A stretch of DNA of 64,000 bases from Octopus sinensis. Its lineage: Eukaryota. Both the position numbers and the translations under genes were made by a program. Under the pieces are notes generated by a model. That model was not told the origin of the DNA and ran no database searches. It saw only the letters and a program-made list of their open reading frames with translations. Positions 39,509 through 64,000 of this stretch are shown piece by piece (the first letter of the stretch is position 1; the number at the start of each line of letters is the position of its first letter). Location: NCBI RefSeq assembly GCF_006345805.1, contig NC_042998.1, forward strand, positions 182,466,001 to 182,530,000, given 5' to 3'.

Positions 39509-39564
<56 letters not shown>

Positions 39565-39881: not shown

Positions 39882-39916
<35 letters not shown>

Positions 39917-41230: not shown

Positions 41231-41268
<38 letters not shown>

Positions 41269-41950: not shown

Positions 41951-42340
41951 CCACAGGTATGTATATATATATATATATATATATGCACAATGATAATAAG
42001 GATTCTTGAGAGAATCAGGCACTTGAAGGATATGCACCAGGTAGGGTTGAGTTAACCTGTGATCACCACCTTTAGTTGAACAAATATCTTGTAAGATATT
42101 CAAGTTGTGCATACAGAGAAGAAAACCAACACTACAAGTATTTAGTGCCTAGCGGCTGGTCCAAAGCACACATTGGATTGATCATACATCGTTTGGTACA
42201 CTCTAGGATGTCTGACATGTCGTGATCCCTTTGGTGTATTGTAAGCAAATGAATAATAAATAGACAATGAATAAATGTCAGTTCATTTATCCATTGTCTG
42301 TTATTATTTATTTTCATATATGATGATGATGATGATGATG

Positions 42341-45300
42341 TCACACATCACACCAGTGGAAGGAACCCACTTTACAATAGTGGCGATGAGGAAAAAAATA
42401 ATTTAAGTGAAGTGAAAAAAAACATTCACATTGAGAGTTTAAAGTAATTCATGTGGAAAATTAAATAACTCGACAAAAAAGAAACAAAAATCTTGTGCAA
42501 ACTTATGAAAATCATAAAATATGGAAGACCTGTTAGCTGGGGAAGTTGAGTTGCAAACACTGCAGCAACAACAAGAACAACAAGGATTGCAGCCGCAAAT
42601 GTTAAAAGTAATGAAATTGATAACCAAACTGGAGAATACAGTTTTGCCTGACCCTGTAGCAAACTCCATAAGTGAATTCAAATACGACCCCAAAGAAGGA
42701 GTAACCTTTGAGCTTACTTTCGAATATTTGAACAAATTTTTGAAAAAGAATGTCAGGATTGACATATAATATAAATGGCGGTGCCCCAGCATGGCCACAG
42801 CTCATTAGCTGAAACTGGAAAAATCAAATCAAAATCAAAATCAAAATCATTGGACAGACAAAATTAAAATGTATTTAGTTTTAAGAAAACTAGTGACAGC
42901 AGAGCATAAGAAGTATAGTAATTTCATATTGCTAAAAAAAGCATCTGACATAAATTTCACTGACACAGTTGACATTTTGTGCAAAATGTTTAGTGAAAAG
43001 AGCTTACTAAATAGAAAAGAACAAAGATGAAGACTTCACTACTAACACAGGCAGAATAAAAAAAGAATGTAAGAAATTTAGTTGGAATTTACCAAAAAAA
43101 AAACAACAAAAGACAAAGACAGGTGTGTAAACAACAAACGTGTATTAGTTTAATGCTCAGGAAGGTGAGATAGTCTTTTACATTTTGAGCCTACACTCCT
43201 CAACAGAAAGAAACATGGGAAAATAAACAGAGAGAGAGAATAAAAAAGCTTTAGTGGCTAGTGGTCAATCATGGCGATGCTTACTCCAGATTCTTTCAAG
43301 TGTTCGATTTTTGCACAAAGATTGACAGATAAAAGGGATGCAGAAATCCAAGCGAAAATTCTAGCAAAACTGAAAATGAACCAGGATTTGATATTGTTGA
43401 AACTGTCAGAAGAGTTGACATGATATTAAAATTAAGGTATGACACAGAAGAAATTTAATTGAAAGAGTGTTTTCACATAAGACCAGTGCAAAATACTTGG
43501 AAGACAAAGTGTTTCAAGAAAAACAGAAAAAATATTGGGATGTAGACCCATGTATGGGATGCACCTGAAAAAAGATTGCCCATACAAAGAAGCAAAGTGT
43601 TTTCACTGCAGGTTTACAGGACATGTAAAATTGCACTGCAAAACTAGAATGATAGGAAATGGAACAAACAACAAAAAATAAACAGTTTGTAAGCAGGAAA
43701 CGTTGCGATTACAACAAACAGAAAATTTGTGAATGAGAGAATTGAAACCACTAGTGTCAGAATGCAATTAGACATGGGAAGTGACATCACAATCATAAAT
43801 GAGGAAACATGGGAACAGGTGGGTAAACCAAAATTATGTATTTCAAACAAAATAATGTATATAATATGAAAGAAAATTATATTTCGTGGGTGAACACATT
43901 TGTAATATAATGTTCAAAGGTCAAACCAAAAAAGTGAATGTTTATATGTTGAAAAAAAATCCATGAATTTATTCGGCACTGAAAGTATAGAGAAATTTAA
44001 TTTATGGGATATGCCCATAAATGCTTTGTACAATAACATAAATGGAGCAGTCAAACGAGGTTTATGAACTGAAACAAAAAAAAGAAAACATTATGTGGAA
44101 CATTGTGCGTAAACTACCAGTAACTTTGGAAGAAATAAAAAGTAATGTGAGAAATGGAAAATTTATTAATGAAGCCAAAAGAAAACTGCAATTAACAAAA
44201 GGAAATAAAGAAAGGTCTGATGCAAGGAACTTCCAAGATGTGAGCATGTATTCTAAATGTGATGGTGTACTAATGTATGGTCAGAGGGTAGTCATACCAC
44301 AGACATTACAGAAGAGAATGCTAAGAGTCCCATGTGGGACACCCAGGCATCTCTAGAATGAAAGCGCTGATGTGAAGTTTCATATACTAGCCAAGTATTG
44401 ACAAGGAAGTTGAAAACCCAGTAAAAGGCTGCAGAGGATGTGTGCTGGCAGTGAAACTACCAACTACAAAATATGAACCTTGGCTGGAAGTGAAAATACC
44501 ATGATTGCATATTGATTTTGCATATTGATTTTGCAGGCTCAGTAAATGGATATTATTATTTAATAGTAGTGAACAGGTACACAAAATGACCTGAGGTTGC
44601 GAGGTGTACATGACCAACCTCATATATGGTAGTAAACTTTTTACACGAGCTGTATGCAAGATTTGGTGTACTGGATATAATTGTCTCTGATAACAGAACA
44701 CAGTTTGTATACTGTGAGTTTAAAAGATTCTGCAAGATGTTCATGTTAGAACATAAAACTATAGCACTGCATTACCCTAGATAGAATGAAAAGGCAGATC
44801 GATTCATGGACACTTTTAAGAGAGCTTTAAAGAAAGCTAATAAGGAAGCCATGGATGAGGTCATAATCCAACAATTCTTAAGGGTATACAGGGTGACTCC
44901 AAACCCAAATGCACCAGAAGGAAGTTCACCAGCAGACTTAATGTTTGCCAGAAAGATGAAGTTAGTATTTGATAAGCTGTTACCAGTGATGAAAAAAACA
45001 TGTGCAAGTAAAGACATGCCAAAATTCTTTAGAATCGGTGATAAGATATATGTAAAAATATACAAAAATAGCAAGCAATACTGGAAAAAAGGAGAAATTG
45101 TAACAGGAAGAATGATGTATGGTGTAAGAAGAAGAAATGGAATGGAAAGGAGACAGAGAAATCAGCTTAAGGAAAGATTCATACAAAAGGAACCAACAAG
45201 AGTAGAAATACTGATGGATTGGCTATATGGCACTTTTCAGGTTCCGACACTGTTACAGGAAGTAGAAAACACACATACAAGGAAAAGGAAGAATAGAGAA

Positions 45301-45716
45301 TTCTTAAAAGTAGACTTTAAGAAGAAATGATATTGAGTATATAAAAAAGGAGGAGGTGGGGTGAATAAAAGAAATTGATTGTTAAATAAAATAATTAAAA
45401 AGTGAGATTCTATATAGTGAAACTGTATACCACTTCCCAATAAAAAAGTGGTAGGAGGCAGCCATTATAAATAGACCGGTAGCCACTTGTCAAGAGAGGG
45501 TCAAGAGCTGAAGAGTTGAAAGTCGACAGTTTTAGTCAGTGTCTTGTGGAGTTATCATTAATAGTAAGGCAGAAGAAGTTAGTGTATTACTATTCCGGTA
45601 TGAAGAGATACAACAGTATCCGATGACTGGTAACTATTGTGGCTACTAGTATACAACAGCAACTACAACACAACGACAGTCACACATCTCACCAGTGGGA
45701 GGAACCCACTTTACAA
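42341..45716 (+). mobile_element. Gypsy LTR retrotransposon, decayed, RT/RNase H deleted
   Basis: 5' LTR remnant 42341-42377 matches 45680-45716. PBS TGGCGATGAGG at 42381. Gag SISEFKYDPKEGVTF, CCHC knuckles ~43550-43640, protease LDMGSDITII, integrase HPG/HIDFA/IVSDN..QF. PPT 45343-45361 and 3' LTR 45362-45716. Confidence 0.9.
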
Positions 45717-47249
45717 CAGTTTTTAAAAAATTTATTTGTATTTAAATCTTAACTACAAACTATGATACAAATAAATTAGCTATACATCCTCTACTCTTCA
45801 TTTTCTTACCTTATAAATTTTATGCCGGACCCCCCCTGGCACCTGTGCAGGTGGCACGTAAAAAGCACCCACTACACTCGCGGAGTGGTTGGCGTTAGGA
45901 AGGGCACATACACACACACATACATGCGCACATGCACACACACATGCTTTCCAGTTAAGATAATTACCTCTTCAGCAGAAGCCGTGTACTCTCTGGAACT
46001 TTTGCTCTATAAAATAGAAAAAATTCTGGTTGCATTAACATATAAAGTATATATCATGAATAAAAGTTATGCAACGTAAAAGTTACTAAAAAACATTTAC
46101 TTATGATGTTTTGACTTTGTTTAAATAAGAATAGGTGATTTACATACAAACAAATACAAACAGAAACACATATATACATCCACAAATATCAATGGGTTTT
46201 TGTACTGAAGTTGTGTGTTTACACAAATAATAAACTGGAATATCCTTCTCAATTGGTAATTATTATTGTTCACAGCTGGGAACATAACAACAATGAATAT
46301 AAGCCCACCAATAAGAATAATGAAATGTTAAACAAGGCTGCTGAAAAAAAGCATTTCAATATAAATATTCCATGATAACCAAAGGTACAGAACTAGGAAC
46401 AATTCAAATTACCAGAATGCAATTCCAGTTATTCAGGATAACCCATACAGCAACACAACCATTCAAGCCATGTTTCCTTAATGAATGTTTTCAAAAAATA
46501 TACGTGTACATAGCTAAAATAACTTCCACATATGGTATCGAAAAGAACTACATAGGAATTATGGAGTACAAGTTTAAAACCAGGAACATACAACATATTC
46601 ACACATTCACATTCTGATTTAAAAATTATTCTACTTCTTTTTTTTAATGTCAACTAAAACTGGAAGTGTAGAATTGATTCATTTTCCAATAACATTGTAT
46701 ATTGTTGAGATTGCAACATAAGTCTGACCAAGAAATTAAACTAATAGAACTAGAACCCCTCAAGCACTAGCTGTAGCTGCCTAAATAATATAGCCGCCAC
46801 AACTCTCTCAATAATAAGTCTTAGTAATATCCCACCACTCCAACAAGCTGAATGCAGCTGTAGAAATGTAATAAACTGATATCTCAATGGAAAATGTCTA
46901 CCAATGGTCTTAATATATAAATGATATCAAAATAGCAGATAGCATTGGAATGACATACACTGGACTAACAATTAACCCTTTTAGAATCAGGTAAGCATGG
47001 CACACATATTCTTTTAAATACAGAGAGAGAATTGAGTCAACATCAATGTTACAATATATCTGGAAGGTCAAATTTGATGACCGCCAAATTAATAAAATAG
47101 ATTATTGTTAAAAAACCTAGGATATGCTCAAATAGAAGTAAGAAAGCAACATTTTGTATGGTAGAAAAACATTGTACATTAATAACTATATATAACACAT
47201 ATAGATAAGATATTTTTACCATATTTATTGATAATGACAATATCTTAAA

Positions 47250-48410
47250 AAAGAATTTGAAATAGTGTGAATAAGAGGGGTTATTTCCATCAAATTTTTC
47301 ATGTAAATCTGAAACTTAAACCCAAGATCCTGACATCAACTGCAAACTGCTACAGAAAGAGTGATATTGGTTGGCTCAACTTGAGAAGGGAGGAAGGAGA
47401 AAAAGGCTTGAGATCAATGCAAGCAGTCTTTAAATGTCATATAGTCTTTCTCATTTAGCACCTGCTAAACAACAGTAGCAAAAATAAATACATAAACTTA
47501 GTGCTAAAAAGTGAAGAGAAAAAAATCCTACATATCAGCTCCTCTGGAAGTAATCTCTTTCTGATGCATACAAACCCAGAATAGCAACAGAATACCTCAA
47601 AGAAGACCTGGATGTGAAATGCTCAACATACCAATAAAAGGCTATGCATGAGTATGTTTTCCAAAGACTTGAAGAGAACATTAATATCAACATGAAGTGG
47701 AGTCTCTCTTGGATTCATGACACTCCAAAGGCTATGCATTTGCATTCTAAGAATAGGAGTTTGCTACAAAATACTTAGCAGACAAAAGAGACAGTGAAGA
47801 CCCTGAAACCCTAAAATGCAATTGAAAATGTAAATTATGTCATATTTCTGTGGAAGACATCACATATAGGTAGCAGTAGCTCAAACATGTCAAGTTACTA
47901 TCTCCCTATGCAACATGACATCACTAAAACAATTTACAATGTCGTTTGCAAAAAAGAGACCGACCTGAAACAGATATAGTGTATCGTCCTGTTATTGAAT
48001 ACATACACAAGCATAAACATATGGAATAATGTTGGAACATTCATTGCCATTAAAAAATCTGCCAAATGTAAACATAACCAGCCAGATATTGTTGTTCGGG
48101 ACAGAAAATAAAAGTGTATGTGATGTCATAAAGATCAGATGCCCTACTGATGTGAACCTTTGAAAATCAAAAAGAAAAGGAACAACTTCAGACAACTAAT
48201 TTGAAGCCTCTAGCTTCTATATCCTGATTTTAAATTCACATTTATACCAATAATAATTGGTGAACTTGCTTTTGTGAGTAAATGCACATGATAATCTGGA
48301 TAAGCTATGGCTTTCAGAAAAAGAAATCAACCTGTTAATTCACTCATTACAAATATAACTGTGAGTGGAACAGCAAAAGTAGACAAGACTGTTCTTAGGG
48401 GTAAAACATG
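47250..48410 (+). mobile_element. R4/Dong-like LINE 3' region, heavily decayed
   Basis: Remnants of R.EG.KGL, KAMH, CKLC..EDI..H, NQPDIVVRD and FIPIIIG motifs (zinc finger plus restriction-like endonuclease). Confidence 0.65.
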
Positions 48411-48536
48411 ATAGTGTTTTTGTTATCTACATTCCTACAATGAGACTTTGTATTTTTGTTAGAAACCTGTTCCTTTTTCAGATGAAGATTTCATATACTT
48501 AAAAATAGAACATACATACATACATACATACATACA

Positions 48537-48569
<33 letters not shown>

Positions 48570-48728
48570 TCATATATATATATATACATACATACACGCA
48601 CATATATACGCACATATATACATACATAAACACACACATACATATACATACATTCATATGTAAGATACATGTATGTATGTATACAAAATCTCTTCCTCCA
48701 ACCAAGTCAATGTGTTTAATATAGTTAC

Positions 48729-48776
48729 CCTGGGAGGAGTGACTGCGAGGTAGTCGGAATATTTTGTCTTTCGTTG
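48729..48776 (-). CDS. Minus-strand gene micro-exon (QRKTKYSDYLAVTPPR)
   Basis: Strong acceptor tttcttttttcttatag, G|GTAACT donor, 48 nt; frame chosen to fit the phase-0 chain (the phase-1 frame is also open). Confidence 0.6.
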
Positions 48777-50457
48777 CTATAAGAAAAAAGAAACAAGATT
48801 GATCTCTGATTGTGTTAACATAATTAATACATTTCACAATTTCAAATGATATAGCATAAAATGATTAATATAAAACTTCTTAAAACGTTTTGAGTTTGCT
48901 GAAATAAATCCCGATTGTATGCATGTTATCAATTAGTGGTAAACTGCAAAACTCTGAGTTATAACAAGGATTACTTTTAGCATTGCAATAAATATTTTTC
49001 ACTCGCCATTAGCAATGTGCACTTTTCTTGTTATTAACTCCAACATACATTGAGATTCCTATTGATTAATTTTTTATTTTATTATGCAGAGTTTGTGTGC
49101 ATTTTGTGTCTGAAATGATTTAATGAGCACAAATAATTACAAATGAATATTTTAGGGGTAAGTTATTTTCTTCAAGTACCTTCTCAGGTACCCAAGGGAA
49201 CTATCTCATCTCTATTAAGATTTATGTATTGTGATTTATATGATTGAGAATTTGGAAAGTTCTATTTACTTAGTACATTTAAGAATTTGTGTAATCTATA
49301 ACTATTTTATTAGATTAATTGATTCTGTTTCTAAGTGTGAAACCTCTCTAATCCATGGAAGCTTTTTTTTCTAAACCCAAATATATTATGAAGCCATGAG
49401 TATGTTTGTACACTTTATACAAAAGAAGTCATTAACATTAATCCTTTTATTAAATATTTAGTTTTCTCCCACAGACACTTTATATAAAGCTTTTATTACA
49501 TAATTGTTTATTATTCAGTGAGTAATTGAGAGAATATTACCCCTATCTAGTACAATACAATGTTAAGGTTAGCTATATATGCCTAGATATTACAGACTCA
49601 AAAAAAAAATCTTCCACTAAAACCAGAGCCTCACAAAGACCACCGACTTCTTCAGTCTGGACACTACTGCAAAAATACAACAAAATGGCCTTTTAACGGA
49701 AAATGCCAATTGAACTGTAGCTTTAAACATTACATAGAGCTACAGTAAAACAGTAGCTGATATTGTTAAGGCATTTATAATGTTTACAGAGAACAGATTT
49801 AAATTCTGCAGATTCTGGATCACAATCAAATCAACTTCACTGTCACAATACTTCAGGCAGCACAAAATTTAATAAATAAACACACAATGGGATATTGGTA
49901 AAGATAGACCACAGGATTCAGATAATAACATTTATATCAGAGAAAAATCCCCACAAAATAATAACATATAATACATAAAAAAGAAGTGAACTTGTTATGA
50001 AATCCACAGAATAAAAAAAGTTCCTCTTCAATGAATATGAAATATAATGTGTTTTCAATGTTATAATGATAAGTCTTTCCCTTGTAAAAAGTTTGATGTA
50101 TTTTTACAAGAAATATGATAACCTTGTTATTATGTTAGATTTAACAGTTTCTATCTATCAAGATACATACGTACATACATACATACATACATACATACAT
50201 ACATACATACATACAGACATACATACATACATACATGCAGACAGACAGGCATACATACATACATACATACATACATACATACATACATACATACATGCAT
50301 GCATGCATGCATGCATACATACATACATACATACATACATGCATGCATGCATACATACATACATACATATAATACACACATACAAATATATATATGCATG
50401 TGTATTTGTGTGGATATTTAATTCTTAAACCGAGGTCAACATGTCCAAAGTAATTAC

Positions 50458-50511
50458 CTTTTCAAATAGTGTTGGCACATACTTGCTATATTTAGGAGAT
50501 GGGCTCCTTTC
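50458..50511 (-). CDS. 54-nt repeat exon (ERSPSPKYSKYVPTLFEK)
   Basis: ttttacag acceptor, AAG|GTAATT donor, phase 0 to 0. Confidence 0.7.
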
Positions 50512-51158
50512 CTGTAAAATTAAATAAAATCAGATACATTATTTTATTGAAATAATTTTTCAAAACAAATCATTTTTATTGTGTTAAAAGAACTCATGAA
50601 TGTATACATACACAATAATAAAACTATACTCTAGGCAAAAAACGAGTTTGATATCTGATGACAGTTTGCCTCAAGGTGAACATGAAAATTAGAGCTATGA
50701 TGAGTTATCAGTTACTGACTGGTGAGTACAGATATGAAAGGAGAACAAATCCAAGGCAAGTGATACAAATGGAAGGAAACTATGGAAGAGGTCCAATGTC
50801 AAAAATGTGGAAAGGAATGGAGAAGGCAGATCTGAAGATACTGAATCATACAAAGATAAACAACAACCATGATAAATGAAAGTGGAAGTGCATTGCTCAG
50901 TGGTTAGCGTGTTGGACTCATGATTGTATGATTGTGGTTTCGATTCTTGGACTGGGATGCATTGTATTCTTAAGCAAAACACTTCATTTCCTTTTGCTTA
51001 AGTCCACTCAGGTGGTTAAAATGATATAATAATAAGCCTTTCCCTTGTAAAAGATTTGATACATTTTTACAAGAAGTATGATGGCCTTGTTAATATATAT
51101 TACAAAAAAGAAGAATATTTGCTTACTAAACCCAGGTCAACATGCCCAAAGTAATTAC

Positions 51159-51212
51159 CGTTTCAAATTCTGTCACCTCAATTCTGCTAGATTTAGGAGT
51201 TTGGACCATTTC
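51159..51212 (-). CDS. 54-nt repeat exon (EMVQTPKSSRIEVTEFET)
   Basis: tcttacag acceptor, G|GTAATT donor; only phase 0 is open. Confidence 0.7.
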
Positions 51213-52619
51213 CTGTAAGATTAAATGAAATCAGAAACATTATTGTATTAAAATAATAAATTTTCAAAACAAATCATTTCTAATTTGTTAAAAGAACTCA
51301 TGAATGTATACAGATATATATATATATAGATAGATAGATGATAAAGGTTAAAATACAAAAGCCATAATGGTAACAATGTTTAGTCTCAACATTACAATAA
51401 TTACACTGCACTTTTACTGTGAGCACATTTCCCCTTGTACGGAAACTAAAACTAACAAATACACATATGCACACATAGTACATACAGACACTCCCATACA
51501 CATATACTCACACACACACACTTTGCATAAGAATTTAAAATGGTCTTCATTCAGTAATTAATTCATCCACATATTTACAACATCATAATCTTATCTTCAA
51601 GATTATGTGTTGTTGGCACTACTTTTATAGTAAGAAGGGGTTATTCAATTTTGACTGTTAAATTTTGTCATCAATCAAAAGTTTACAACGCAAACAGTCA
51701 AAATTCAAATTTTGGCAGTAACATTACTCTAAAGTGGTAGCAACACATTCCAGCATCTCTTCATTCTGAAGATGAGGCCATGAAGTTCTAGGAACGAACT
51801 GAAAGGAAATTCTATGAAAATATGAAAAAGAACTTGATAAAAAAAATGTGCCACATAAAAAGCACTTGTGCTGGTATCACGTAAAAAGCACACATGCTGC
51901 TGCCATGTAAGACCTACCATGATGGAGTCACATAAAAAGTACCTACACTGGTGTCTTGTAAAGAGCCCTCGCTACATTCTGTAAAGTGGTTGGCATTAAC
52001 AGTAACATCCAGCTATAGAAATCATGCTAAAATAAACAATTGAAGTCAGGTGCGGCTCTTCAGATTGCTAGCTCCTGTCAAACCATTCAACACATGCCAG
52101 CATGGAAAACGGATTTTAAATGACTTGTTTAGTTTATTTCTTCAGATTTTCTATAGAAATTATAGTCAGCCCTGATTTTGCTCCAACATTTCTTGAGATC
52201 GAAGATGAAAACGGATAGTGGGCATACATGAAATATTTCAGGAAGTTTTCCTTTCATCAGCACCCAGCCAACCTATAAATCATCCATGAACAAATTGATT
52301 AAACAGCTACTAAATACAGCAGTGTAACTTTACACAATATACCAATTATCAAAAAACATTTGTGAAGCTGGTGCATAAATATTAATGACGTATTATTAAT
52401 GTCAAAACAAAATTAGTGGTGGCTATAATTTCTATAGAAAATCTGTAGGGATAACTTTAACGAGTGATGTAATAGTTAACACAGCAGAACAGAGACTTAT
52501 AAAAACATTAGATATAATTTGTAGTATATCATGGTCACATAATGAAATACAGTGTCCCTACACATCATTAATATGAACATCATATATATGTATGTATGTA
52601 TTATATGTAAGTATATGTA

Positions 52620-52672
<53 letters not shown>

Positions 52673-52916
52673 CGGAGCTTAAAATAAAGTATATATATAT
52701 ATATACATATACATATATACATAGAGAGAGAGAAAGCGAGAGAGAGGTAGGCAGTCAGGATTTGCATAAGAAATTTTTATTTAGCTCTTTTGTCCTTTTG
52801 AGATTTTTATCAACACACTAAATAAATATTCGGTATCCAAATACTACCTCCATTTTTTTTTATATACATACATACATGCTTTTATGTGTACATACATACA
52901 TATGATATATATCATG

Positions 52917-52950
<34 letters not shown>

Positions 52951-54321
52951 ATATATATATAGACCGGAGCTTAAAATAAAGTATATATATATATATACAT
53001 ATACATATATACATAGAGAGAGAGAAAGCGAGAGAGAGGTAGGCAGTCAGGATTTGCATAAGAAATTTTTATTTAGCTCTTTTGTCCTTTTGAGATTTTT
53101 ATCAACACACTAAATAAATATTCGGTATCCAAATACTACCTCCATTTTTTTTTAATATACATACATACATGCTTTTATGTGTACATACATACATATGATA
53201 TATATCATGTATATATATATATATATATATATACATACATACATGCATACATACATACATATATGTATATAGATATCTACCTCATATGTGGGCAATTCTT
53301 TCTTTGGGTGTGCTTGTGGATCTGTTAGCTAACTCCTCATACATTGTTTAATCAATTTCAATGAAACTTGACACGTGAGGAGAACTCATGTCTAGAAACC
53401 TCATGGCATACTCAAACTGTTGAAAAATTGACAGAAGGGCCCCTGGAAGAAATCCTTATATATAAACAAGGGAAATAACCCATTCATTTACCTAAATTAT
53501 TGGTAAAAAGGAAATTGAGTATGCTTATTTCTTAGTATTTGAACTGTTAGAGTTATTTTAACAATTTATCCAGTACAGCCTTAAACAAGTAAATAGTATT
53601 TTACTAAACAATAAATCAACTTATTTCGGTTAGTGACTTATTCACGAATATATCAACACCACCACCCCTGAGGGTAATATTCTCAAGGAATGCACGAAAG
53701 CCTTTTCAGAGTTATTTACTTAAATTGTTATCTCAAATTTGATTAGCCTGTTATTATGTAACATTCCACGACTATAGAATAATATACTTTATATAGTATT
53801 TATCTTCTTATTTGTTCTATATACTCTGGGAATGCATTAAAGCCCTTTTTCGGGCTACTTTATTTGAATTCTTACTATCCGATAACTAATTTCATGTTAT
53901 TGCATAACTTACTTCACAATTTGGGTATTCGTAATTTATTTAGAAGTCCTAAAATCAAGATCCTGTGTAAGAGAGTTCAGTATTCTCTATAGATGCACAA
54001 AAACCGTTTTAAGGGATACATAATTTGTATCGCTGTTATTGGATTACATATAATACATCAAAAAGAAGTGAACTTGTTATGAAATCCACAGAATAAAACA
54101 AGAGTTCCTCTTTAGCGAATATGAAATATAATGTGTTTTCAATGTATAATGATAAATCATTCCCTTGTAAAGATTCTGATATATTTTGTACAAGAAATAC
54201 GGTGGCCCTGTTAACATGTTGAATTAGCAGTTTTATCTATTATGATAGACATATACATACATACACATACATACACACACACATACACACACACATACAT
54301 ACACACATACATACACACACA

Positions 54322-54354
<33 letters not shown>

Positions 54355-54434
54355 TATACTTATACAAATAGATGCATGTGTACTAAAGAAGATATTGCTT
54401 CCTAAACCGAGGTCAACATGTCCAAAGTAATTAC

Positions 54435-54487
54435 CATTTCAAATTCTGTTGACTCATTTTGCTAGATCTAGGTAGTGGGCCCATTGG
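54435..54487 (-). CDS. Repeat exon copy of PMGPLPRSSKHESTEFEM with a 1-bp deletion (53 nt)
   Basis: Identical to 61859-61912 except for one missing base; either a frameshift or a sequencing error. Confidence 0.55.
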
Positions 54488-56203
54488 CTGTAAAATTGAA
54501 TAAAATCAGAAACATATTGTATTAAAATAATAAATTTTCAAAACAAATCATCTTAATTTGTAAAAGAACTCATGAATGTATACAGATATATAATATATAG
54601 ATAGATAGATGATAAAGGTTAAAATACAAAAGCCATAATGGTAACAATGTTTAGTCTCAACATTACAATAAATACACTGCACTTTTACTGTGAGCACATT
54701 TCCTCTTGTACGGAAACTAAAACTAACAAATACACATATGCACACATAGTACATACAGACACTCCCATACACATATACTCACACACACACCCACACACAC
54801 ACACTTTGCATAAGAATTTAAATGGTCTTCATTCAGTAATTAATTCATCCACATATTTACAACATCATAATCTTATCTTCAAGATTATGTGTGTTGGCAC
54901 TACTTTTATAGTAAGAAGGGGTAATTCAATTTTGACTGTTAAATTTTGTCATCAATCAAAAGTTTACAACGCAAACAGTCAAAATTCAAATTTTGGCAGT
55001 AACATTACTCTAAAGTGGTAGCAACACATCCAGCATCTCTTCATTCTGAAGATGAGGCCATGAAGTTCTAGGAACGAACTGAAAGGAAATTTATGAAAAT
55101 ATGAAAAAGAACTTGATAAAAAAAATGTGCCACATAAAAAGCACTTGTGCTGGTATCACGTAAAAAGCACACATGCTGCTGCCATGTAAGACCTACCATG
55201 ATGGAGTCACATAAAAAGTACCTACACTGGTGTCTTGTAAAGAGCCCTCGCTACATTCTGTAAAGTGGTTGGCATTAGCAAGAACATCCAGCTATAGAAA
55301 TCATGCTAAAATAAACAATTGAAGTCAGGTGCAGCTCTTCAGATTGCTAGCTCCTGTCAAACCATTCAACACATGCCAGCATGGAAAACGGATTTTAAAT
55401 GACTTGTTTAGTTTATTTCTTCAGATTTTCTATATAAATTATAGTCAGCCCTGATTTTGCTCCAACATTTCTTGAGATCGAAGATGAAAACGGATAGTGG
55501 GCATACATGAAATATTTCAGGAAGTTTTCCTCTTTCATCAGCACCCAGCCAACCTATAAATCATCCATGAACAAATTGATTATTAAACAGCTACTAAATA
55601 CAGCTGTGTAACTTTACACAATATACCAATTATCAACAAACATTTGTGAAGCGTGCATAAATATTAATGACGCATTATTAAGTCAAAACAAAATTAGTGG
55701 TGGCTATAATTTCTATAGAAAATCTGTAGGGATAACTTTAACGAGTGATGTAATAGTTAACACAGCAGAACAGAGACTTATAAAAACATTAGATATAATT
55801 GTAGTATATCATGGTCACATAATGAAATACAGTGTCCCTACACATCATTAATATGGACATCATATATGTATGTATGTATTATATGTAAGTATATGTATGT
55901 GTGCATATATATATATATGTATATATAGATAAGAAAGTTTGTTTGGTAAAGCACGTGGGTGAATATATAAGAAAATAGTAAAGTGTGAAAAAACGACAGA
56001 AGGCTTAAATGTTAAAAAATATATATATTTGTGTCAAAATGTCTGGAGAATATTGGAAAAATTTTTTTTTTTTTTTTCCTTTCCTTAAAATGACATAATT
56101 TTAAAAATTTTTAAAGAAAAAATCACTCACTACCTCCCCTTATTTAGAAATCTCCTGGAAATAAAAACAACGATAATTCCATGCAATATAAACATAACGT
56201 CAC

Positions 56204-56243
56204 AAGAAATTTGAAAAGCTACATGCGAAACCGGTAATTTCTT
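56204..56243 (+). ncRNA. Hammerhead ribozyme, U3-A8 variant, 5' pseudo-LTR
   Basis: aagaaat-TTGAAAA-GC-tacat-GC-GAAA-CCGGT-A-atttctt: 7-bp stem I, 2-bp stem II, palindromic ACCGGT stem III. Confidence 0.7.
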
Positions 56244-59200
56244 TAAAAATTTTTTAAATTATGTCATTTTAAGGAAAGGAAAAAAAAAAAAAATTTTCCA
56301 ATATTCTCCAGACATTTTGACACAAATATATATATATTTTTTAACATTTTAGCCTTCTGTCGTTTTTTCACACTTTACTATTTTCTTTATATATTCACCC
56401 ACGTGCTTTACCAAACAAACTTTCTTATCTATATATTAAACACATGAGAACGAAAATGCCACAGAAGTCAAACACCTCGGACAAAACCTTAAATGAGGAC
56501 ATACTCAAGAACTGAAAAATATTAATTCACAGCTTCTTAACCTGAACAACAAAATTGAGGAATCAAACTTACTCGCCCGGGAAAGTAAAAGTAAAAGCAA
56601 TGAAGATGCAACCCGTTACACTGACCAGGTGAGTAAGGATCTACACAACTGTATATACAACACTGAACTCAATTTTCATCAACAAATCCGAAAATAATAC
56701 ACAGGCACCTAATGAAACACAGCAGGACACCATACGCACCCAAACCAACCCAACAAAAAGAAAAATAGGAAACGTTTGGAATAAAACTGCACAACAGAAA
56801 ACTCACCTACTGGAACATGATAAAAAATTCCAACAAAGCAGATATCTACGAGGGATGGATAAACTCAACACCAATTATCCTCCCACGCAAATTCCAGATA
56901 AAATTAATTCCTAACGAGCCTGACGGACAGAGATCTATTAGAGAAAAGTCAGCTCTGTTCAATTTTAAATCAGAAATAGAGCTTCTAAGACTCAGGGCCT
57001 CCACAAATGAAGAAAAACTTAAAAGCATAGACGAGGAGATGCACAATCTAATACTAAAATATACCGAGGGACAACCCCTCGATAATACATTGGATCACTG
57101 GAAGGATTCCTGTGAGAGAGAAGAGAGAAATTCTCTCCTACGCTGGGAGAAAAACATGGACTTCTTCCAAAAATATAGTGAAACCTTCAAAAATGAATTG
57201 GGTACAAATAATCCCTTCCTTAAGAAAATTACAATAAATAAAAAAGAAAAACTAACAACCCACGAACAACCCCCAACTATCCTCCATACACTAAAAACAG
57301 AAATCACCCACAACCAACCTTTACAAACCACGCTAGACCTAACAGGGAACTAGCTGAAAGAGGACGCATCTATGAAAGAAATTACACCAAAAACAGAACA
57401 AACAACAACATCCTAATACCAGACCCAACCACCATACAGCACAATACGACACTAGGATAAGAAATACACCACACACAAATCACTACTACCCCATGAACCA
57501 AAACTACTGGTCCCCACTAAACACAAGACAAATGCAAAGAAACACTATGTCAAGCAACATCCCACATACAAGAAGTTCGAAACAAAAATATTCCCCATAC
57601 AGAAATTTACACACACCACAAGCATTAACAACCATAGATTCCCCCACACACACAACGATCGGAGGCAACAATACCACCACTCCCCCGACCAAATACCACA
57701 CAACCTCACAGACAACTCATACAAACAAAATTACACCCAACATTTTTTAGCCAGGGACCAGGGACACCAGGACACAGGCTGGAACCTAGTAATAAGGAAA
57801 ACCGAAGATAATCAATCTTTCAACCAAACCTCTTTCTAACATAAAAATTGACATCCTCGCAAAAGGCTCAAATTTACACCAACTCCACGCAGAGCAAACC
57901 TAAATGAACTCAAGGATAATATAACAGAATTTTGCAGAAAATTAAGACTAGCAGAAGCATCAAACAGTTTCAATACTGAAGATGAATCACTAGTCAAGAA
58001 CAAAAGTGAACACATCCCACACAGAGGAAGAAATAAAGATCTTGACGAATTCTGTAACCACATTGAGAACTTCCCCTACCATACTATACATAAACAGAAA
58101 GCTAACCCAAATTTTAACACTACACAATGGAAAGAACTGATAGAACTCCAAAATGATGAAGATATAACCATTAAGGAAGCGGACAAGGGAAATGCAGTTG
58201 TAATAATGGATACATCATACTACAGAAATCTTGTAATTTCCTTGCTTGATGAAGACCTACATTATGAAAAAATTACCAACTACACCCCACAAAAAATAAT
58301 GAAAACTCTATCTTCACTAATTAAAACCCATGAAAAGGAACTGACAACCAAAGAGATTGATTTCCTAACAAACTTTAAATGCAAACCTAGCCTTTTCTAT
58401 GGTCTGCCAAAAATTCATAAAAGTCAAATTATAAATGAAACCATTAAAAAATCACCAAAGACATACATACACCTAATCCGGGGGACCTAAAACTACGACC
58501 CATTGTAGCTGGCCCAACCTGTGAAACACACAGACTAAGTCTACTTATGGACATCCTCTTGAAACCCTTCCTTAAACATATCGATAGCCATATCAGAGAT
58601 GACTTAGATATGTTAAACCACCTCCCAAAAAAAACCAAGGAAGAAACAATCCTGGTTTCATTTGATGTAGTCAACTTGTATACCAGTATTCCTCATAATT
58701 ATGGACTGGAGGCAATACAATTCTGGTTAGACCAATTTCTGGAAGAAATACCAAAAAGGATCAGTAAGGAATTCATTACTAAATCAATTGAATTCATCCT
58801 ACACAATAACCACTTCATGTTTGACAATACATTTTACCGTCAAAAATCCGGAATTGCTATGGGTACAAGGGCAGCACCAGTCATTGCGAACTTAACAATG
58901 GGATACATGGAAATAATCATTTACCAGGAATCTCTATCAATCTTTGGAAACTCCCTCTCTCAATACATAAAAGAGAATTGGAAACGATTCCTAGACGATT
59001 GTTTCATTCTCTGGAATGAAAACATAGATAAACTCCTAAAATTTAAAAACCTATTGAACAGCATAAACCCAAATATACAGTTCACAATGGAATACAACCA
59101 AAAGGAGCTCCCGTTCTTGGATATACTAATTAAAAAAATTAACCTTAAAATAGAAACAGACATTTTTTACAAAGCCACAGACGCCAAACAATACCTTCTT

Positions 59201-60202
59201 TTTAATTCATGCCACCCAAGACACACTAAAACAAACATCCCCTTCAACCTTGCAAGAAGGATATGCACAATAGTGTCAGAACAAAATACCAGGAACTTTA
59301 GACTGCAAGAACTCAAAAACACCCTAATTGACAGACATTACCCAGCTCAACTCATAGAGGATGGGATCAGACGTGCAACAGAAATCAACATAGAAACTTT
59401 AAGAAAAGTTCAACACAACAACACACCTTCCCCGAAAATACTACCTTACATATCTACATACAACCCCAGAAACAAAGAAGCCTTCACCATCATCACCAGA
59501 GATTTACCAATACTTCATAAAAACCCAAAATTAAAGGAAATTCTAAACATACACCAAATCATTAAAAGCTACAAACAGCCTAAATCACTTAAAAAGATTC
59601 TCACAAAGGCAAAATTGTCTTCTAAAATTACGGATGCAAAAGTAAAAAAATGTGGTAGATCGAACTGTGCAACATGTCCTAACCTATTGGAAGGATCAGA
59701 ATTCTTCTTTAAAGAGGGACAGAAATTTAAGATCAAATCTAACTTTACTTGTGCCTCTGAAAACATAATTTATGTATTAAATGCTCGGGCTGCCACCAAG
59801 ACTACGTGGGTTCCATGGGACTATCACTCAGGCGCAGATGCACACTGCATCGACAACAGATTGCATTCCCAGAATATAGAATGATACCTTTTAGTGAGCA
59901 CATTGAGAAATGCGCAAAGCAACTACTGCCACAATTTTTAATCTTCCCATTTTACCAATGTGCTTTCGGATCATCAACACAAATGAGACTGAACAAGGAA
60001 ACATTCTTCATTGAAAAGTACAAACCCAGACTCAACCATCCGAACATACTGACACAGAGAAATTAACAAGGAAAAGGGAAAAAAAAATTTTTAAGCGATT
60101 ATCTCCCCTACACCGGAAAAAATCACTCACTACCTCCCCTTATTTAGAAATCTCCTGGAAATAAAAACAACGATAATTCCATGCAATAAAACATAACGTC
60201 AC

Positions 60203-60242
60203 AAGAAATTTGAAAAGCTACACGCGAAACCGGTAATTTCTT
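60203..60242 (+). ncRNA. Hammerhead ribozyme, U3-A8 variant, 3' pseudo-LTR
   Basis: Same fold as 56204-56243; the only change is in the stem II loop (tacac). Confidence 0.7.
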
Positions 60243-61743
60243 AAAAAATTTTTTAAATTATGTCATTTTAAGGAAACGAAAAAAAAATTTTTCCAATATT
60301 CTCCAGACATTTTGACACAAATATATATATTTTTTAACATTTAAGCCTTCTGTCGTTTTTTCACACTTTACTATTTTCTTATATGTATATATATATATAC
60401 ATATATATATAGAGAGAAAGAGAGAGAGAGGTAGGCAGTCAGGATTTGCATAAGAAATTTTTATTTAGCTCTTTTGTCCTTTTGAGATTTTTATCAACAC
60501 ACTAAATAAATAGTCGGTATCCAAATACTACCTCCATTTTTATTTAATATACATACATACATGCTTTTATGTGTACATACATACATATGATATATATCAT
60601 GTATATATATATATATATTATATATATTATATATTATATATATAATATACTACATACATACATACATGCATACATACATACATATATGTATATAGATAAC
60701 TACCTCATATGTGGGCAATTCTTTCTTTGGGTGTGCTTGTGGATCTGTTAGCTAACTTCTCATACATGTTTTATCAATTTCAATGAAACTTGACACGTCA
60801 GGAGAACTCATGTCTAGAAACCTCATGGCATACTCAAACTGTTGAAAAATTGACAGAAGGGCCCCTGGAAGGAATCCTTATATATAACAAGGGAAATAAC
60901 CCATTCATTTACCTAAATTATTTGGTAAAAAGGAAATTGAGTATGCTTATTTCTTAGTATTTGAACTGTTAGAGTTATTTTAACAATTTATCCAGTACAG
61001 CCTTTAAACAAGTAAATAGTATTTTACTAAACAATAAATCAACTTATTTCGGTTAGTGACTTATACACGAATATATCAACACCACCACCCCTGAGGGTAA
61101 TATTCTCAAGGAATGCACGAAAGCCCTTTTCAGAGTTATTTACTTTAAATTGTTATCTCAAATTTAATTAGCCTGTTATTATGTAACATGCTTCACGATT
61201 ATAGAATAATATACTTTATTAGAATTTCCTTTTATGTTCTATATACTCTGGGAATGCATTAAAGCCCTTTTTCGGGCTACTTTATTTGAATTCTTACTAT
61301 CCGAAAACTAATTTCATGTTATTGCATAACTTACTTCAGAATTTGGGTATTCATAATTTATTTAGAAGTCCTAAATTCAAGATCCTGTGTAAGAGAGTTC
61401 AGTATTCTCTATAGATGCACAAAAACCATTTTAAGGGATACATAATTTGTATCGCTGTTATTGGATTACATATAATACATCAAAAAGAAGTGAACTTGTT
61501 ATGAAATCCACAGAATAAAACAAGAGTTCCTCTTTAGCGAATATGAAATATAATGTGTTTTCAATGTTATAATGATAAATCATTCCCTTGTAAAGATTCT
61601 GATATATTTTTGTACAAGAAATATGGTGGCCCTGTTAACATGCTGAATTTAGCAGTTTTATCTATCATGATAGACATATACATACATACACATACATACA
61701 CACACACATACACACACACATACATACACACATACATACACAC

Positions 61744-61775
<32 letters not shown>

Positions 61776-61858
61776 TATACTTATACAAATATAGATGCAT
61801 GTGTACTAAAGAAGATATTTGCTTCCTAAACCGAGGTCAACATGTCCAAAGTAATTAC

Positions 61859-61912
61859 CATTTCAAATTCTGTTGACTCATGTTTGCTAGATCTAGGTAG
61901 TGGGCCCATTGG
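61859..61912 (-). CDS. 54-nt repeat exon (PMGPLPRSSKHESTEFEM)
   Basis: ttttacag acceptor, GAAATG|GTAATT donor, phase 0 to 0, intact. Confidence 0.7.
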
Positions 61913-63330
61913 CTGTAAAATTAAATAAAATCAGAAACATTATTGTATTAAAATAATAAATTTTCAAAACAAATCATTTCTAATTTGTTAAAAGAACTCA
62001 TGAATGTATACAGATATATATATATATAGATAGATAGATGATAAAGGTTAAAATACAAAAGCCATAATGGTAACAATGTTTAGTCTCAACATTACAATAA
62101 ATACACTGCACTTTTACTGTGAGCACATTTCCTCTTGTACGGAAACTAAAACTAACAAATACACATATGCACACATAGTACATACAGACACTCCCATACA
62201 CATATACTCACACACACACCCACACACAACACTTTGCATAAGAATTTAAAATGGTCTTCATTCAGTAATTAATTCATCCACATATTTACAACATCATAAT
62301 CTTATCTTCAAGATTATGTTTGTTGGCACTACTTTTATAGTAAGAAGGGGTAATTCAATTTTGACTGTTAAATTTTGTCATCAATCAAAAGTTTACAACG
62401 CAAACAGTCAAAATTCAAATTTTGGCAGTAACATTACTCTAAAGTGGTAGCAACACATCCAGCATCTCTTCATTCTGAAGATGAGGCCATGAAGTTCTAG
62501 GAACGAACTGAAAGGAAATTCTATGAAAATATGAAAAAGAACTTGATAAAAAAAATGTGCCACATAAAAAGCACTTGTGCTGGTATCACGTAAAAAGCAC
62601 ACATGCTGCTGCCATGTAAGACCTACCATGATGGAGTCACATAAAAAGTACCTACACTGGTGTCTTGTAAAGAGCCCTCGCTACATTCTGTAAAGTGGTT
62701 GGCATTAGCAAGAACATCCAGCTATAGAAATCATGCTAAAATAAACAATTGAAGTCAGGTGCAGCTCTTCAGATTGCTAGCTCCTGTCAAACCATTCAAC
62801 ACATGCCAGCATGGAAAACGGATTTTAAATGACTTGTTTAGTTTATTTCTTCAGATTTTCTATAGTAATTATAGTCAGCCCTGATTTTGCTCCAACATTT
62901 CTTGAGATCGAAGATGAAAACGGATAGTGGGAATACATGAAATATTTCAGGAATTTTTCCTCTTTCATCAGCACCCAGCCAACCCATAAATCATCCATGA
63001 ACAAATTGATTAAACAGCTACTAAATACAGCTGTGTAACTTTACACAATATACCAATTATCAAAAAACATTTGTGAAGCTGCTGCATAAATATTAATGAC
63101 GTATTATTAATGTCAAAACAAAATTAGTGGTGGCTATAATTTCTATAGAAAATCTGTAGGGATAACTTTAACGAGTGATGTAATAGTTAACACAGCAGAA
63201 CAGAGACTTATAAAAACATTAGATATAATTTGTAGTATATCATGGTCACATAATGAAATACAGTGTCCCTACACATCATTAATATGGACATCATATATAT
63301 GTATGTATGTATTATATGTAAGTATATGTA

Positions 63331-63374
<44 letters not shown>

Positions 63375-63606
63375 TATATATATAGAGAGAGAGAGAGAAA
63401 GAGAGAGAGAGATAGGCTGTCAGGATTTGCATAAGAAATTTTTATTTAGCTCTTTTGTCCTTTTGAGATTTTTATCAACACACTAAATAAATAGTCCGTA
63501 TCCAAATACTACCTCCATTTCTTTTTAATATATAAAATCTGTACATCACCTCAAATATACATACATACATGCTTTTATGTGTACATACATACATATGATA
63601 TATATC

Positions 63607-63645
<39 letters not shown>

Positions 63646-64000
63646 CATACATGCATACATACATACATATATGTATATAGATATCTACATCATATGTGGC
63701 CAATTCTTTCTTTGGGTGTGCTTGTGGATCTGTTAGCTAATTCCTCATACATTGTTTAATCAATTTCAATGAAACTTGACACGTGAGGAGAACTCATGTC
63801 TAGAAACCTCATGGCATACTCAAAACGTTGAAAAATTGACAGAAGGGCCCCTGGAAGGAATCCTTATATATAAACAAGGGAAATAACCCATTCATTTACC
63901 TAAATTATTTGGTAAAAAGGAAATTGAGTATGCTTATTTCTTAGTATTTGAACTGTTAGAATTATTTTAACAATTTATCCAGTACAGCCTTTAAACAAGT

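What the first reader, a model, noticed from the sequence alone, without database searches (positions are those of the whole stretch)
49950..64000. Protein repeat domain growing by tandem duplication of whole ~3-kb exon+intron units
Seen: each unit carries one 54-nt phase-0 symmetric exon on the minus strand. The youngest units encode PMGPLPRSSKHESTEFEM (61912, 54487), older ones EMVQTPKSSRIEVTEFET and ERSPSPKYSKYVPTLFEK, grading into the 48-57-nt exons further down. Age therefore decreases toward the 5' end, and the array runs off the window. Near-identity between units begins next to the splice acceptor. Established: symmetric exons can be duplicated or skipped without frameshift. Inference: an actively expanding, probably copy-number-variable and alternatively spliced Ser/Pro/Lys-rich (possibly phospho-regulated) domain on an orphan membrane coiled-coil protein. 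This is the strongest candidate for an undescribed system here.
Basis: partly seen in the sequence, partly recalled or inferred. Interest (0 to 1): 0.85.

Follow-up and report, generated by a model that had tools for sequence, protein, structure and literature searches.

The report
Tandem micro-exon amplification in octopus gene
A run of about 3-kb DNA units, each carrying one tiny in-frame 54-base exon, has recently multiplied inside an octopus gene for a conserved but uncharacterised coiled-coil protein (C10orf67-like), lengthening its flexible middle region; this is a clear case of a known way that repetitive proteins grow.

Summary
The repeat is real. The window is Octopus sinensis chromosome DNA. 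The finding lies in annotated gene LOC118762221 (minus strand, about 148 kb, 923 aa).

**Array.** Seven units of about 3.0 kb, 97.4-98.9% identical, span 51107 to about 74011, 10 kb past the window end. Older copies C (50458) and D (75024) flank them.

**Exons.** Each unit carries an AG|54 nt|GT phase-0 exon. The copy at 54435-54487 has a 1-nt deletion, and its unit holds a 4.45-kb retroelement.

**Pattern.** Two exon types (PMGPLP..., EMVQTP...) alternate as a 6-kb higher-order repeat. There is no age gradient toward the 5' end.

**Protein.** It is neither orphan nor membrane-bound. It has a DUF4709 domain and C10orf67-like relatives, and no hydrophobic segment. About 30 consecutive phase-0 micro-exons encode a 444-aa Ser/Lys/Asp/Glu-rich linker.

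**Other species.** O. bimaculoides amplified a different unit (20-aa exons) at the same site. Its annotated isoforms each skip one unit.

**Unexpected.** The two exon types differ at 14 of 54 sites, while their introns differ at 10 of 2851. The old exon modules appear to sit on a young intron backbone.

This is a new member of a known kind (tandem exon duplication). Transcript use and copy-number polymorphism are untested.

The parts
16467..64000 (-). 3' two-thirds of gene LOC118762221 (Octopus sinensis, 923-aa C10orf67-like/DUF4709 protein). The gene continues to extended coordinate 164442.
   Evidence: Exact exon-by-exon mapping of P0001 onto the minus strand; protein identity
51107..64000 (.). 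In-window part of the high-identity tandem array. Units are about 3.0 kb in a 6-kb two-exon higher-order repeat. The array ends at about 74011, outside the window.
   Evidence: Self-BLAST; unit identity matrix 97.4-98.9%
61859..61912 (-). Exon A2, 54 nt, phase 0/0, PMGPLPRSSKHESTEFEM = aa 602-619 of the model
54435..54487 (-). Exon copy Ax, 53 nt. It is A-type with a 1-nt deletion (frameshift) and is not in the gene model. Its unit is an A/B recombinant.
51159..51212 (-). Exon B1, 54 nt, EMVQTPKSSRIEVTEFET = aa 620-637. This is the 3'-most unit; array homology stops about 52 nt past its donor.
50458..50511 (-). Exon C, 54 nt, ERSPSPKYSKYVPTLFEK = aa 638-655. It is an older copy (flanks about 84-86% identical to array units) and the likely ortholog of O. 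bimaculoides QRSPTPKSRKDEPTEFVK.
55932..60380 (+). 4.45-kb retroelement inserted in the Ax unit only. RT ORF at 58448-59884; 280-bp direct terminal repeats at 56116-56394 and 60116-60388; inverted repeats at 55921-56119 and 56436-56238.
60571..61468 (.). Interspersed repeat inside the unit, about 390 nt 3' of the exon. Many genomic copies at 80-85% identity. The same piece lies at about 53148-54045 in the next unit. It was not detected in O. bimaculoides units.
52624..53241 (.). 291-bp internal tandem duplication private to the 51159-54434 unit
49234..50016 (.). Repeat R, 92% identical to 76792-77581. The two copies bracket the whole D...C block. In O. bimaculoides, R lies inside each array unit.
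48729..48776 (-). Older micro-exon, 48 nt, QRKTKYSDYLAVTPPR (aa 656-671)
45968..46006 (-). Older micro-exon, 39 nt, SKSSREYTASAEE (aa 672-684)
39617..39673 (-). Older micro-exon, 57 nt, QTYYRCSKESREFLSDTEM (aa 685-703)
36209..36259 (-). Older micro-exon, 51 nt, KGRSHSPSKEFLSDTEM (aa 704-720)
34448..34477 (-). Last micro-exon of the linker, 30 nt, DKHFKSPVTK (aa 721-730)

Best explanation
**What it is.** The region is a young, lineage-specific tandem amplification inside the micro-exon-encoded linker of the Octopus sinensis C10orf67-like gene LOC118762221.

**The module.** The gene carries about 36 short phase-0 exons (30-57 nt). Each sits in a conserved module of roughly 200 nt: about 100 nt of acceptor-side intron, the exon, then about 50 nt of donor-side intron beginning GTAATTA.

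**The array.** Two neighbouring old modules, A and B, together with the 3-kb intron between them, were multiplied to seven copies. That intron had by then acquired an interspersed repeat. The mechanism I infer is unequal crossing-over or template switching whose exchange points fall in the conserved exon-proximal flanks. The result is an (A-B)n array with a 6-kb period. Its introns are 97.4-98.9% identical, while the two exon types remain 72% identical.

**Effect on the protein.** Every exon is 18 whole codons. Each unit gained, lost or skipped therefore changes the Ser/Lys/Glu/Pro-rich linker between the N-terminal DUF4709 coiled coil and the C-terminal coiled coil by 18 aa without a frameshift.

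**Shown:** the array structure, the exon frames, gene membership, the independent amplification in O. bimaculoides, and the exon-confined divergence.

**Inferred:** the recombination mechanism, a splicing role for the conserved flanks, and linker-length tuning as the selected effect.
For: **Array and units**
- Repeat structure.
- Unit identities of 97.4-98.9%, with same-type units closest.
- The 6-kb offset aligns at 97.4%, against 96.0% at the 3-kb offset.
- Each unit has 9-25 private substitutions.

**Gene**
- A 923-aa O. sinensis protein maps exon by exon, and about 30 consecutive exons are whole-codon exons.

**Family**
- DUF4709 and C10orf67-like relatives.

**Module conservation**
- Flanks align across about 35 units over 100 kb while the exon sequences have diverged.
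- The donor-side motif occurs only at this locus in the genome.

**Exon-confined divergence**
- Fixed A/B differences are 14 of 54 exon sites against 10 of 2851 intron sites (p = 1.6e-19).
- Shared states with C, D and the O. bimaculoides exons form a mosaic.
- B-specific variants are confined to -16...+34 around the exon, and their extent differs between B1, B2 and B3.
- Array homology ends 52 nt 3' of B1 and about 132 nt 5' of A'.
- The Ax unit is an out-of-register A/B recombinant.

**Lineage specificity**
- O. bimaculoides has at least five 60/54-nt exons at the same site, with a different unit content.
- Orthologous introns are about 88-93% identical between the species.
- Its isoforms differ by single units.
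Against: - No transcript data could be examined. The NCBI model uses only five of the nine copies and is a prediction.
- Four copies (73826, 70869, 64850 and the frameshifted 54435) may not be spliced in.
- The O. bimaculoides 'isoforms' could reflect ambiguous read mapping among near-identical exons.
- The exchange-in-the-flanks mechanism needs at least two rare events with breakpoints in short (50-130 nt) homologies. It is not distinguished from short-tract gene conversion, or from diversifying selection on the exons.
- Between species the flanks are only modestly more conserved than bulk intron (92% against about 90%).
- RNAalifold found no conserved structure in the donor flank.
Confidence: 0.82

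Rival explanations
1. Assembly artefact. The array is an over-expansion, or haplotypes placed in tandem, and the real locus has one or two units.
For: The assembly is long-read based, so the single-base deletion in Ax could be a consensus error. The O. bimaculoides counterpart is full of gaps, which shows the region is hard to assemble.
Against: - Units carry 9-25 private substitutions each, with roughly equal numbers of transitions and transversions.
- One unit has a private 4.45-kb retroelement and another a private 291-bp duplication.
- An ordered A/B alternation with a recombinant unit is not what collapsed or duplicated haplotigs give.
- No extra copies sit on unplaced contigs.
- The gene model contains two A exons that differ in sequence, HDSTEFEM and HESTEFEM.
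Confidence: 0.03
2. The duplication is real but largely neutral. It is an intronic segmental duplication that happens to carry exon copies. Only some copies are spliced, the rest are silent or decaying pseudo-exons, and the protein is not being actively lengthened.
For: - The NCBI model omits four of the nine copies.
- One copy is frameshifted and sits beside a retroelement insertion.
- The linker evolves faster than introns between species: 84.2% against 91.9% identity. Weak constraint would allow this.
Against: - Eight of nine copies keep an open 18-codon frame, AG/GT sites and identical splice-proximal flanks.
- The three B exons are 100% identical although their introns differ by 1.3-1.7%.
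- The model strings five copies in series.
- The sister species built a comparable expansion that is annotated as coding.
Confidence: 0.25
3. The duplication is young for exons as well as introns. The A/B exon difference arose afterwards by strong diversifying selection on the cassette, not from old modules on a young intron backbone.
For: - All nine codon differences between A and B are nonsynonymous, with no synonymous-only change.
- Micro-exon coding sequence evolves about twice as fast as flanking intron between species.
- A and B share two derived states.
Against: - It needs about 11-15 substitutions in 54 nt during a time in which the introns gained about 0.35% fixed differences.
- B shares the three-base state GTG (after GAG) with D, while A shares states with C and the O. 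bimaculoides exons. This mosaic points to older ancestry or conversion.
- B-type variants extend into the intron (-16, -8, +13/14, +34) and to different extents in different copies. That looks like exchange tracts, not selection on codons.
- The O. bimaculoides array shows no such exon excess.
Confidence: 0.15
4. A Dscam-like cluster of mutually exclusive exons. One unit is chosen per transcript through competing RNA pairings involving the conserved intronic flanks.
For: The exons are tandem homologs of equal length with conserved intronic flanks. This general pattern is reviewed for tandem exon duplications in PMC9013439.
Against: - Gene models in both species include several units in series.
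- The exons are symmetric, so joint inclusion keeps the frame.
- No consensus structure was found in the donor flanks.
- No docking site was searched for beyond that.
Confidence: 0.04

Closest known systems
Tandem exon duplication in animal genes (reviewed in PMC9013439; human cases in PMC9741552)
   Same: Adjacent homologous exons of equal length and phase arise by duplication of exon-plus-intron segments. Symmetric exons allow in-frame gain, loss or skipping.
   Different: Most described cases are pairs, or clusters used in a mutually exclusive way. Here the copies are modelled in series, there are seven or more young copies in a two-exon higher-order repeat, and the whole 444-aa linker is built this way.
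Schistosome micro-exon genes (MEGs) (bioRxiv 10.1101/2023.06.21.545858; PMC4350168)
   Same: Much of the coding sequence comes from very short symmetric exons separated by long introns. The encoded segments evolve rapidly, and exon skipping can vary the protein.
   Different: MEG products are small secreted proteins specific to the parasite. This is a 923-aa protein with no hydrophobic N-terminus, with conserved DUF4709 and C-terminal domains, and no sequence relation to MEGs was seen.
Repeat regions built from small exons, such as titin PEVK, nebulin super-repeats and the 54-bp exons of fibrillar collagens (from my own knowledge, not checked here)
   Same: Spring- or spacer-like regions are encoded by many short in-frame exons. 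They expand by segmental duplication of exon blocks, sometimes as multi-exon super-repeats, and copy number differs between species.
   Different: The protein family is unrelated. There is no Gly-X-Y or PEVK pattern. Exons here are 30-57 nt, and the young units are 3 kb because of a repeat insertion.
C10orf67 / DUF4709 protein family
   Same: An N-terminal DUF4709 match and a C-terminal coiled-coil motif are shared with gastropod proteins named C10orf67-like. Gigantopelta also has its own short repeat (DGVDKTLR) between the two conserved parts.
   Different: The octopus linker is far longer and encoded by micro-exons. The family's function is unknown; PMC5094585 reports finding no hint of one for human C10orf67.

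Membership tests
C10orf67 / DUF4709 family | Pfam DUF4709 (PF15821) domain near the N-terminus | tested here: met
   P0001 aa 24-106, 27.8 bits against a gathering score of 27.0, E = 3.6e-6. This is borderline. The Argonaut relative scores 31.1 bits and the gastropod relatives 125-127 bits.
C10orf67 / DUF4709 family | Sequence similarity outside DUF4709 to proteins that sources name C10orf67-like | tested here: met
   phmmer matches aa 755-889 and 768-879 to Physella XP_059175355 (E = 1.9e-6) and Gigantopelta XP_041366264 (E = 2.4e-6). The shared motif ...LQxSxxxLRNEMYxRQTLQRQ... is visible.
Tandem exon duplication | Neighbouring exons of one gene that are homologous, of the same length and of the same phase | tested here: met
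   Nine 54-nt (one 53-nt) copies with homologous flanks, five of them mapped as whole-codon exons.
Tandem exon duplication | Alternative (mutually exclusive or cassette) use of the copies | not testable with these tools
   No RNA data were available. Indirect evidence only: the model omits four copies, and O. bimaculoides isoforms X2 and X3 each lack one unit.
Schistosome-type micro-exon gene (MEG) | Most of the coding sequence in short symmetric exons (3-81 bp) flanked by long introns | tested here: inconclusive
   About 30 of 47 coding exons are 30-57 nt and symmetric. They encode 444 of 923 aa, which is 48% and not a majority.
Schistosome-type micro-exon gene (MEG) | Small secreted product with a signal peptide | tested here: not met
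   The protein is 923 aa. Its N-terminus MTAKEEFRKCIIARKQSS is hydrophilic, and the maximum 19-residue hydropathy anywhere is 0.64.
Dscam-like mutually exclusive exon cluster | One exon per transcript, enforced by docking/selector RNA pairing | tested here: not met
   The models include five units in series. RNAalifold on 23 donor flanks gives no consensus structure. No wider search for a docking site was made.
Collagen-type 54-bp exon | Gly-X-Y triplet repeat encoded by 54-bp or related exons | tested here: not met
   The peptides have no Gly-X-Y periodicity.

The most novel reading that the evidence does not exclude
The conserved module of about 200 nt around each micro-exon (acceptor-side flank, 18-codon cassette, donor-side GTAATTA... 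element) may do two jobs. It may act as the signal that lets the spliceosome recognise these very short exons. It may also be the homology at which recombination or template switching recurs. If so, the gene repeatedly reshuffles and multiplies old cassette types on whatever intron lies between them. Each octopus lineage would then gain its own linker length and cassette order, with the cassettes themselves under diversifying selection.
Probability: 0.25. Interest if true: 0.65.

Novelty: new member of a known kind. Interest (0 to 1): 0.45.

Why it matters
- It is an unusually legible example of how a disordered repeat region of a protein is built. Old and young rounds of the same exon-module duplication are preserved side by side in one gene. 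The youngest round is dated as well after the O. sinensis / O. bimaculoides split. The sister species has an independent expansion at the same site.
- It corrects the annotation picture. The O. bimaculoides gene is split into two models with misleading names. At least four in-frame exon copies and several older candidates are missing from the O. sinensis model.
- The contrast between exon divergence and intron identity is a concrete, testable case of recombination breakpoints or selection acting at exon edges.
- The protein family (C10orf67/DUF4709) has no known function, so the biological consequence of changing linker length is open.

Tried and rejected
- **Orthologs in more species.** Two word-indexed protein searches returned only the O. 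sinensis and O. bimaculoides proteins. The full HMMER scan added Argonauta fragments and gastropod C10orf67-like proteins, but no further octopus.
- **Spurious repeat hits.** Hits P0011, P0012 and P0022 carry ...APRKAQVSAFEFE... repeats. I rejected them as chance similarity to TEFE-containing repeats in otherwise unrelated sequences.
- **Conserved RNA structure in the donor flank.** None was found. An earlier attempt with shuffled z-scores timed out.
- **Genome-wide splicing motif or transposon origin for the exon module.** Rejected. The 241-nt module and the degenerate donor motif occur only at this locus. The interspersed repeat in the unit is a separate segment.
- **Solved structure of a family member.** None.
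- **Literature on DUF4709.** None. Papers on C10orf67 give no function.
- **Pfam support for calling the inserted retroelement Penelope-like.** Only RVT_1 was found, with no GIY-YIG hit.
- **Membrane reading.** Rejected on hydropathy.

Full report
**Source and coordinates.** The window is G000:C2:182466001-182530000 of a 2.72-Gb assembly with 13,516 contigs. The best protein match is a 923-aa protein named 'uncharacterized protein LOC118762221 [Octopus sinensis]', on a contig of the same length as C2. The organism is therefore Octopus sinensis. I fetched 160 kb upstream and 40 kb downstream. Coordinates above 64000 continue the window numbering.

- Self-comparison shows direct repeats of about 3 kb from 49961 to the window end and beyond.
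- The supposed second copy of PMGPLPRSSKHESTEFEM at 54487 is 53 nt. One base is missing (AGCAAA-ATGAG), so it reads PMGPLPRSSKMSQQNLK.
- The exon with 90 nt of flank on each side occurs nine times in the genome, all here: 50458 (C), 51159 (B1), 54435 (Ax), 61859 (A2), 64850 (B2), 67876 (A3), 70869 (B3), 73826 (A') and 75024 (D).

**Anatomy of the array.**
- The high-identity part runs from 51107, which is 52 nt 3' of the B1 donor, to about 74011, which is about 132 nt 5' of the A' acceptor. That is 22.9 kb, or 18.5 kb without a 4.45-kb insertion, and it holds seven exon copies.
- Exon types alternate on the minus strand: A', B3, A3, B2, A2, Ax, B1.
- Units are 97.4-98.9% identical. Same-type units are closest: B-B 98.3-98.7%, A2-A3 98.9%, A-B 97.6-97.8%.
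- The 6-kb offset aligns better (97.4% over 6040 nt) than the 3-kb offset (96.0%). The array is therefore a two-exon, 6-kb higher-order repeat, not a simple 3-kb ladder, and it shows no 5'-ward age gradient.
- D and C, at the two ends, are older copies. Their flanks are about 81-86% identical to the array by BLAST, and their introns are 1.2 kb and 0.7 kb.
- Each 3-kb unit contains an interspersed repeat of about 0.9 kb or more (60571-61468), starting about 390 nt 3' of the exon. Many copies elsewhere in the genome are 80-85% identical.
- Homology between the C unit and the array units stops exactly where that repeat begins.

**Private features of single units.**
- A 4.45-kb retroelement with a reverse-transcriptase ORF lies at 55932-60380.
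- A 291-bp internal duplication lies at 52624-53241.
- Each unit has 9-25 private substitutions.

These features argue against an assembly over-expansion.

**The gene.**
- P0001 maps exactly, exon by exon, to the minus strand from 164442 to 16467. This is about 148 kb with 47 coding exons.
- Residues 287-730 are encoded by about 30 consecutive exons of 30-57 nt. Each begins and ends on a codon boundary.
- The model uses D, A3, A2, B1 and C in series. It omits A', B3, B2 and the frameshifted Ax.
- Other in-frame candidates are also omitted: 77702, 102398, 109506 and 134187.
- The 77702 candidate is orthologous to an exon that is used in the O. bimaculoides model.
- I could not inspect RNA evidence, so the use of any particular copy rests on gene models.

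**The protein.**
- It has a DUF4709 match at aa 24-106, 27.8 bits, just above the cut-off of 27.0.
- A full HMMER scan finds O. bimaculoides and Argonauta relatives. It also finds gastropod proteins named 'C10orf67, mitochondrial-like' that match the C-terminal coiled-coil region and carry strong DUF4709 domains. The protein is therefore not an orphan.
- The most hydrophobic 19-residue stretch averages 0.64 on the Kyte-Doolittle scale, so nothing supports a membrane span.
- The linker composition is S 16%, K 14%, D 9%, E 9%. The array-encoded part is E 17%, S 17%, P 12%.
- The family's function is unknown. No DUF4709 literature and no solved structure were found. A study of human C10orf67 reports finding no hint of its function.

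**The whole linker was built the same way.**
- Aligning the flanks of about 35 micro-exon units spread over 100 kb shows a common acceptor-side pattern and a common donor-side pattern. The donor side reads GTAATTAT..(A/T)GA(T/C)AT(A/G)TTGA...GGAAGCAA(A/C)TAT. The exon sequences have diverged beyond recognition.
- A 5' cluster (123-136 kb) consists of 0.7-1.0-kb units at 72-91% identity. It includes a pair of identical exons at 134187 and 134872.
- The donor-side motif occurs nowhere else in the genome. It is therefore inherited locus sequence, not a general splicing signal or a transposon.
- No conserved RNA structure was detected in it.
- Its retention across old duplicates suggests constraint, most plausibly for recognition of these very short exons. 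That is inference.

**Comparison with O. bimaculoides.**
- The ortholog is split into two gene models, XP_052821827 (N-terminal) and XP_052834497/8/9 (C-terminal).
- At the position of the O. sinensis array, the protein reads QRSPTPTPKPSKDEPTEFET, QRRPTSTPKPRKDEPTEFET, QRSPTPTPKPSKDEPTEFET, QRSPTPTPRPSKDEPTEFEM, QRSPTPKSRKDEPTEFVK.
- Isoforms X2 and X3 each lack one 20-aa unit.
- The genomic locus (L030) shows these as 60-nt and 54-nt exons with the same ...TTTTACAG | GTAATTACTTTGGACATGTTG... flanks. Nine assembly gaps fall inside the array, so copy number there is unresolved.
- Orthologous introns of the two species are mostly 88-93% identical, while O. sinensis units differ by only 1-2.6%. 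The O. sinensis amplification is therefore much younger than the split.
- Unit contents differ. O. bimaculoides units contain repeat R, which in O. sinensis only brackets the block at 49234-50016 and 76792-77581. They show no match to the interspersed repeat of the O. sinensis unit.
- The two lineages therefore amplified different segments at the same site.
- The 5' cluster of O. bimaculoides also has its own alternating pair, KKSAISSKEDYKDAKR / KKSVISSKEDYKDAEK.

**The unexpected part.**
- Fixed differences between A-type and B-type units are 14 of 54 exon sites against 10 of 2851 gap-free intron sites (odds ratio 99, p = 1.6e-19). All nine changed codons are nonsynonymous.
- I polarised the sites with C, D and the O. 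bimaculoides exons. Only two states are shared-derived by A and B. Five are private to A, six are private to B, and four are ambiguous.
- B shares GAG-GTG with D, while A shares states with C and O. bimaculoides.
- B-specific variants also occur just outside the exon (-16, -8, +13/14, +34). They reach +34 in B1 and B2 but not in B3.
- The Ax unit has a B-type mid-intron and an A-type exon, so it is an out-of-register recombinant.
- My best reading is that A and B are old neighbouring modules, like C and D. The single intron between them has been multiplied by exchanges whose breakpoints fall in the conserved exon-proximal flanks. Normal in-register unequal crossing-over followed.
- Short-tract gene conversion, or diversifying selection after a young duplication, are alternatives I cannot exclude.
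- Between species the micro-exon coding sequence is 84.2% identical, against 91.9% for its ±100-nt flanks. The C-terminal domain exons are 89.7% identical, against 90.6% for their flanks. The linker cassettes therefore evolve faster than introns in any case.
- In O. bimaculoides the array exons (90-100%) and flanks (93-98%) show no such contrast.

**Verdict.**
- The claims about an orphan membrane protein, an age gradient and a second intact youngest copy are wrong.
- Mechanistically this is tandem exon duplication building a disordered, in-frame, cassette-like linker. That process is known (PMC9013439; compare schistosome micro-exon genes, bioRxiv 10.1101/2023.06.21.545858 and PMC4350168).
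- It is found here in a new gene family and with an unusually clear record.
- The exon-confined divergence and the conserved module are the parts worth following up.

Noticed in passing
outside the window: extended coordinates 134187-134234 and 134872-134919 (L017): A second young exon duplication in the same gene. Two 48-nt exons encode the identical peptide RRSTLESRDEFLESER, in units about 91% identical. The gene model uses only one.
   Followed up: partly
outside the window: 77702-77755, 102398-102454, 109506-109562 (L011, L013, L014): In-frame micro-exon candidates with the family's flanks that the O. sinensis model omits. 77702 is orthologous to an exon used in O. bimaculoides. In O. sinensis the old donor GT is mutated and a GT 3 nt upstream would keep the frame.
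   Followed up: partly
window 55932-60380: A retroelement is present in only one array unit. It has an RT ORF (RVT_1), 280-bp direct terminal repeats about 95% alike, and an inverted pair at its 5' end. It looks Penelope-like to me, but no GIY-YIG match was found.
   Followed up: partly
window 31505-32323 (+) and 44042-45330 (+): Other transposon remnants lie inside introns of the gene. One is an RT fragment followed by a PHD finger. The others are ORFs with integrase-like appearance but no Pfam hit.
   Followed up: partly
window 49234-50016 and extended 76792-77581: A 790-bp direct repeat (92%) brackets the whole D...C exon block. In O. bimaculoides the homologous sequence lies inside each array unit (L030 27304-28357, 39011-39699, 42607-43590).
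   Followed up: partly
window 50163-50384, 54253-54351, 61678-61772, and the (TA)n runs about 100 nt 5' of each exon: (ATAC)n and (TA)n microsatellites sit on both sides of every exon module, about 90-190 nt from the exon. They are possible sites of slippage or exchange.
   Followed up: no
L030 (O. bimaculoides CM046602.1:103849416-103939049): The ortholog is annotated as two separate genes, with unrelated automatic names such as 'serine/arginine repetitive matrix protein 1' and 'unc-89 isoform'. One N-terminal model ends by reading into the intron (...DADKVII). Nine N-gaps lie inside the array.
   Followed up: partly
window 26422-27315: A GA/CT-rich low-complexity block gives long spurious ORFs in several frames (ERER..., SLSL...).
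   Followed up: no
protein P0010 (Gigantopelta aegis C10orf67-like): This protein carries its own 8-aa tandem repeat (DGVDKTLR, about 8 copies) between the conserved N- and C-terminal parts. A variable repeat linker may be a recurrent feature of this family in molluscs.
   Followed up: no
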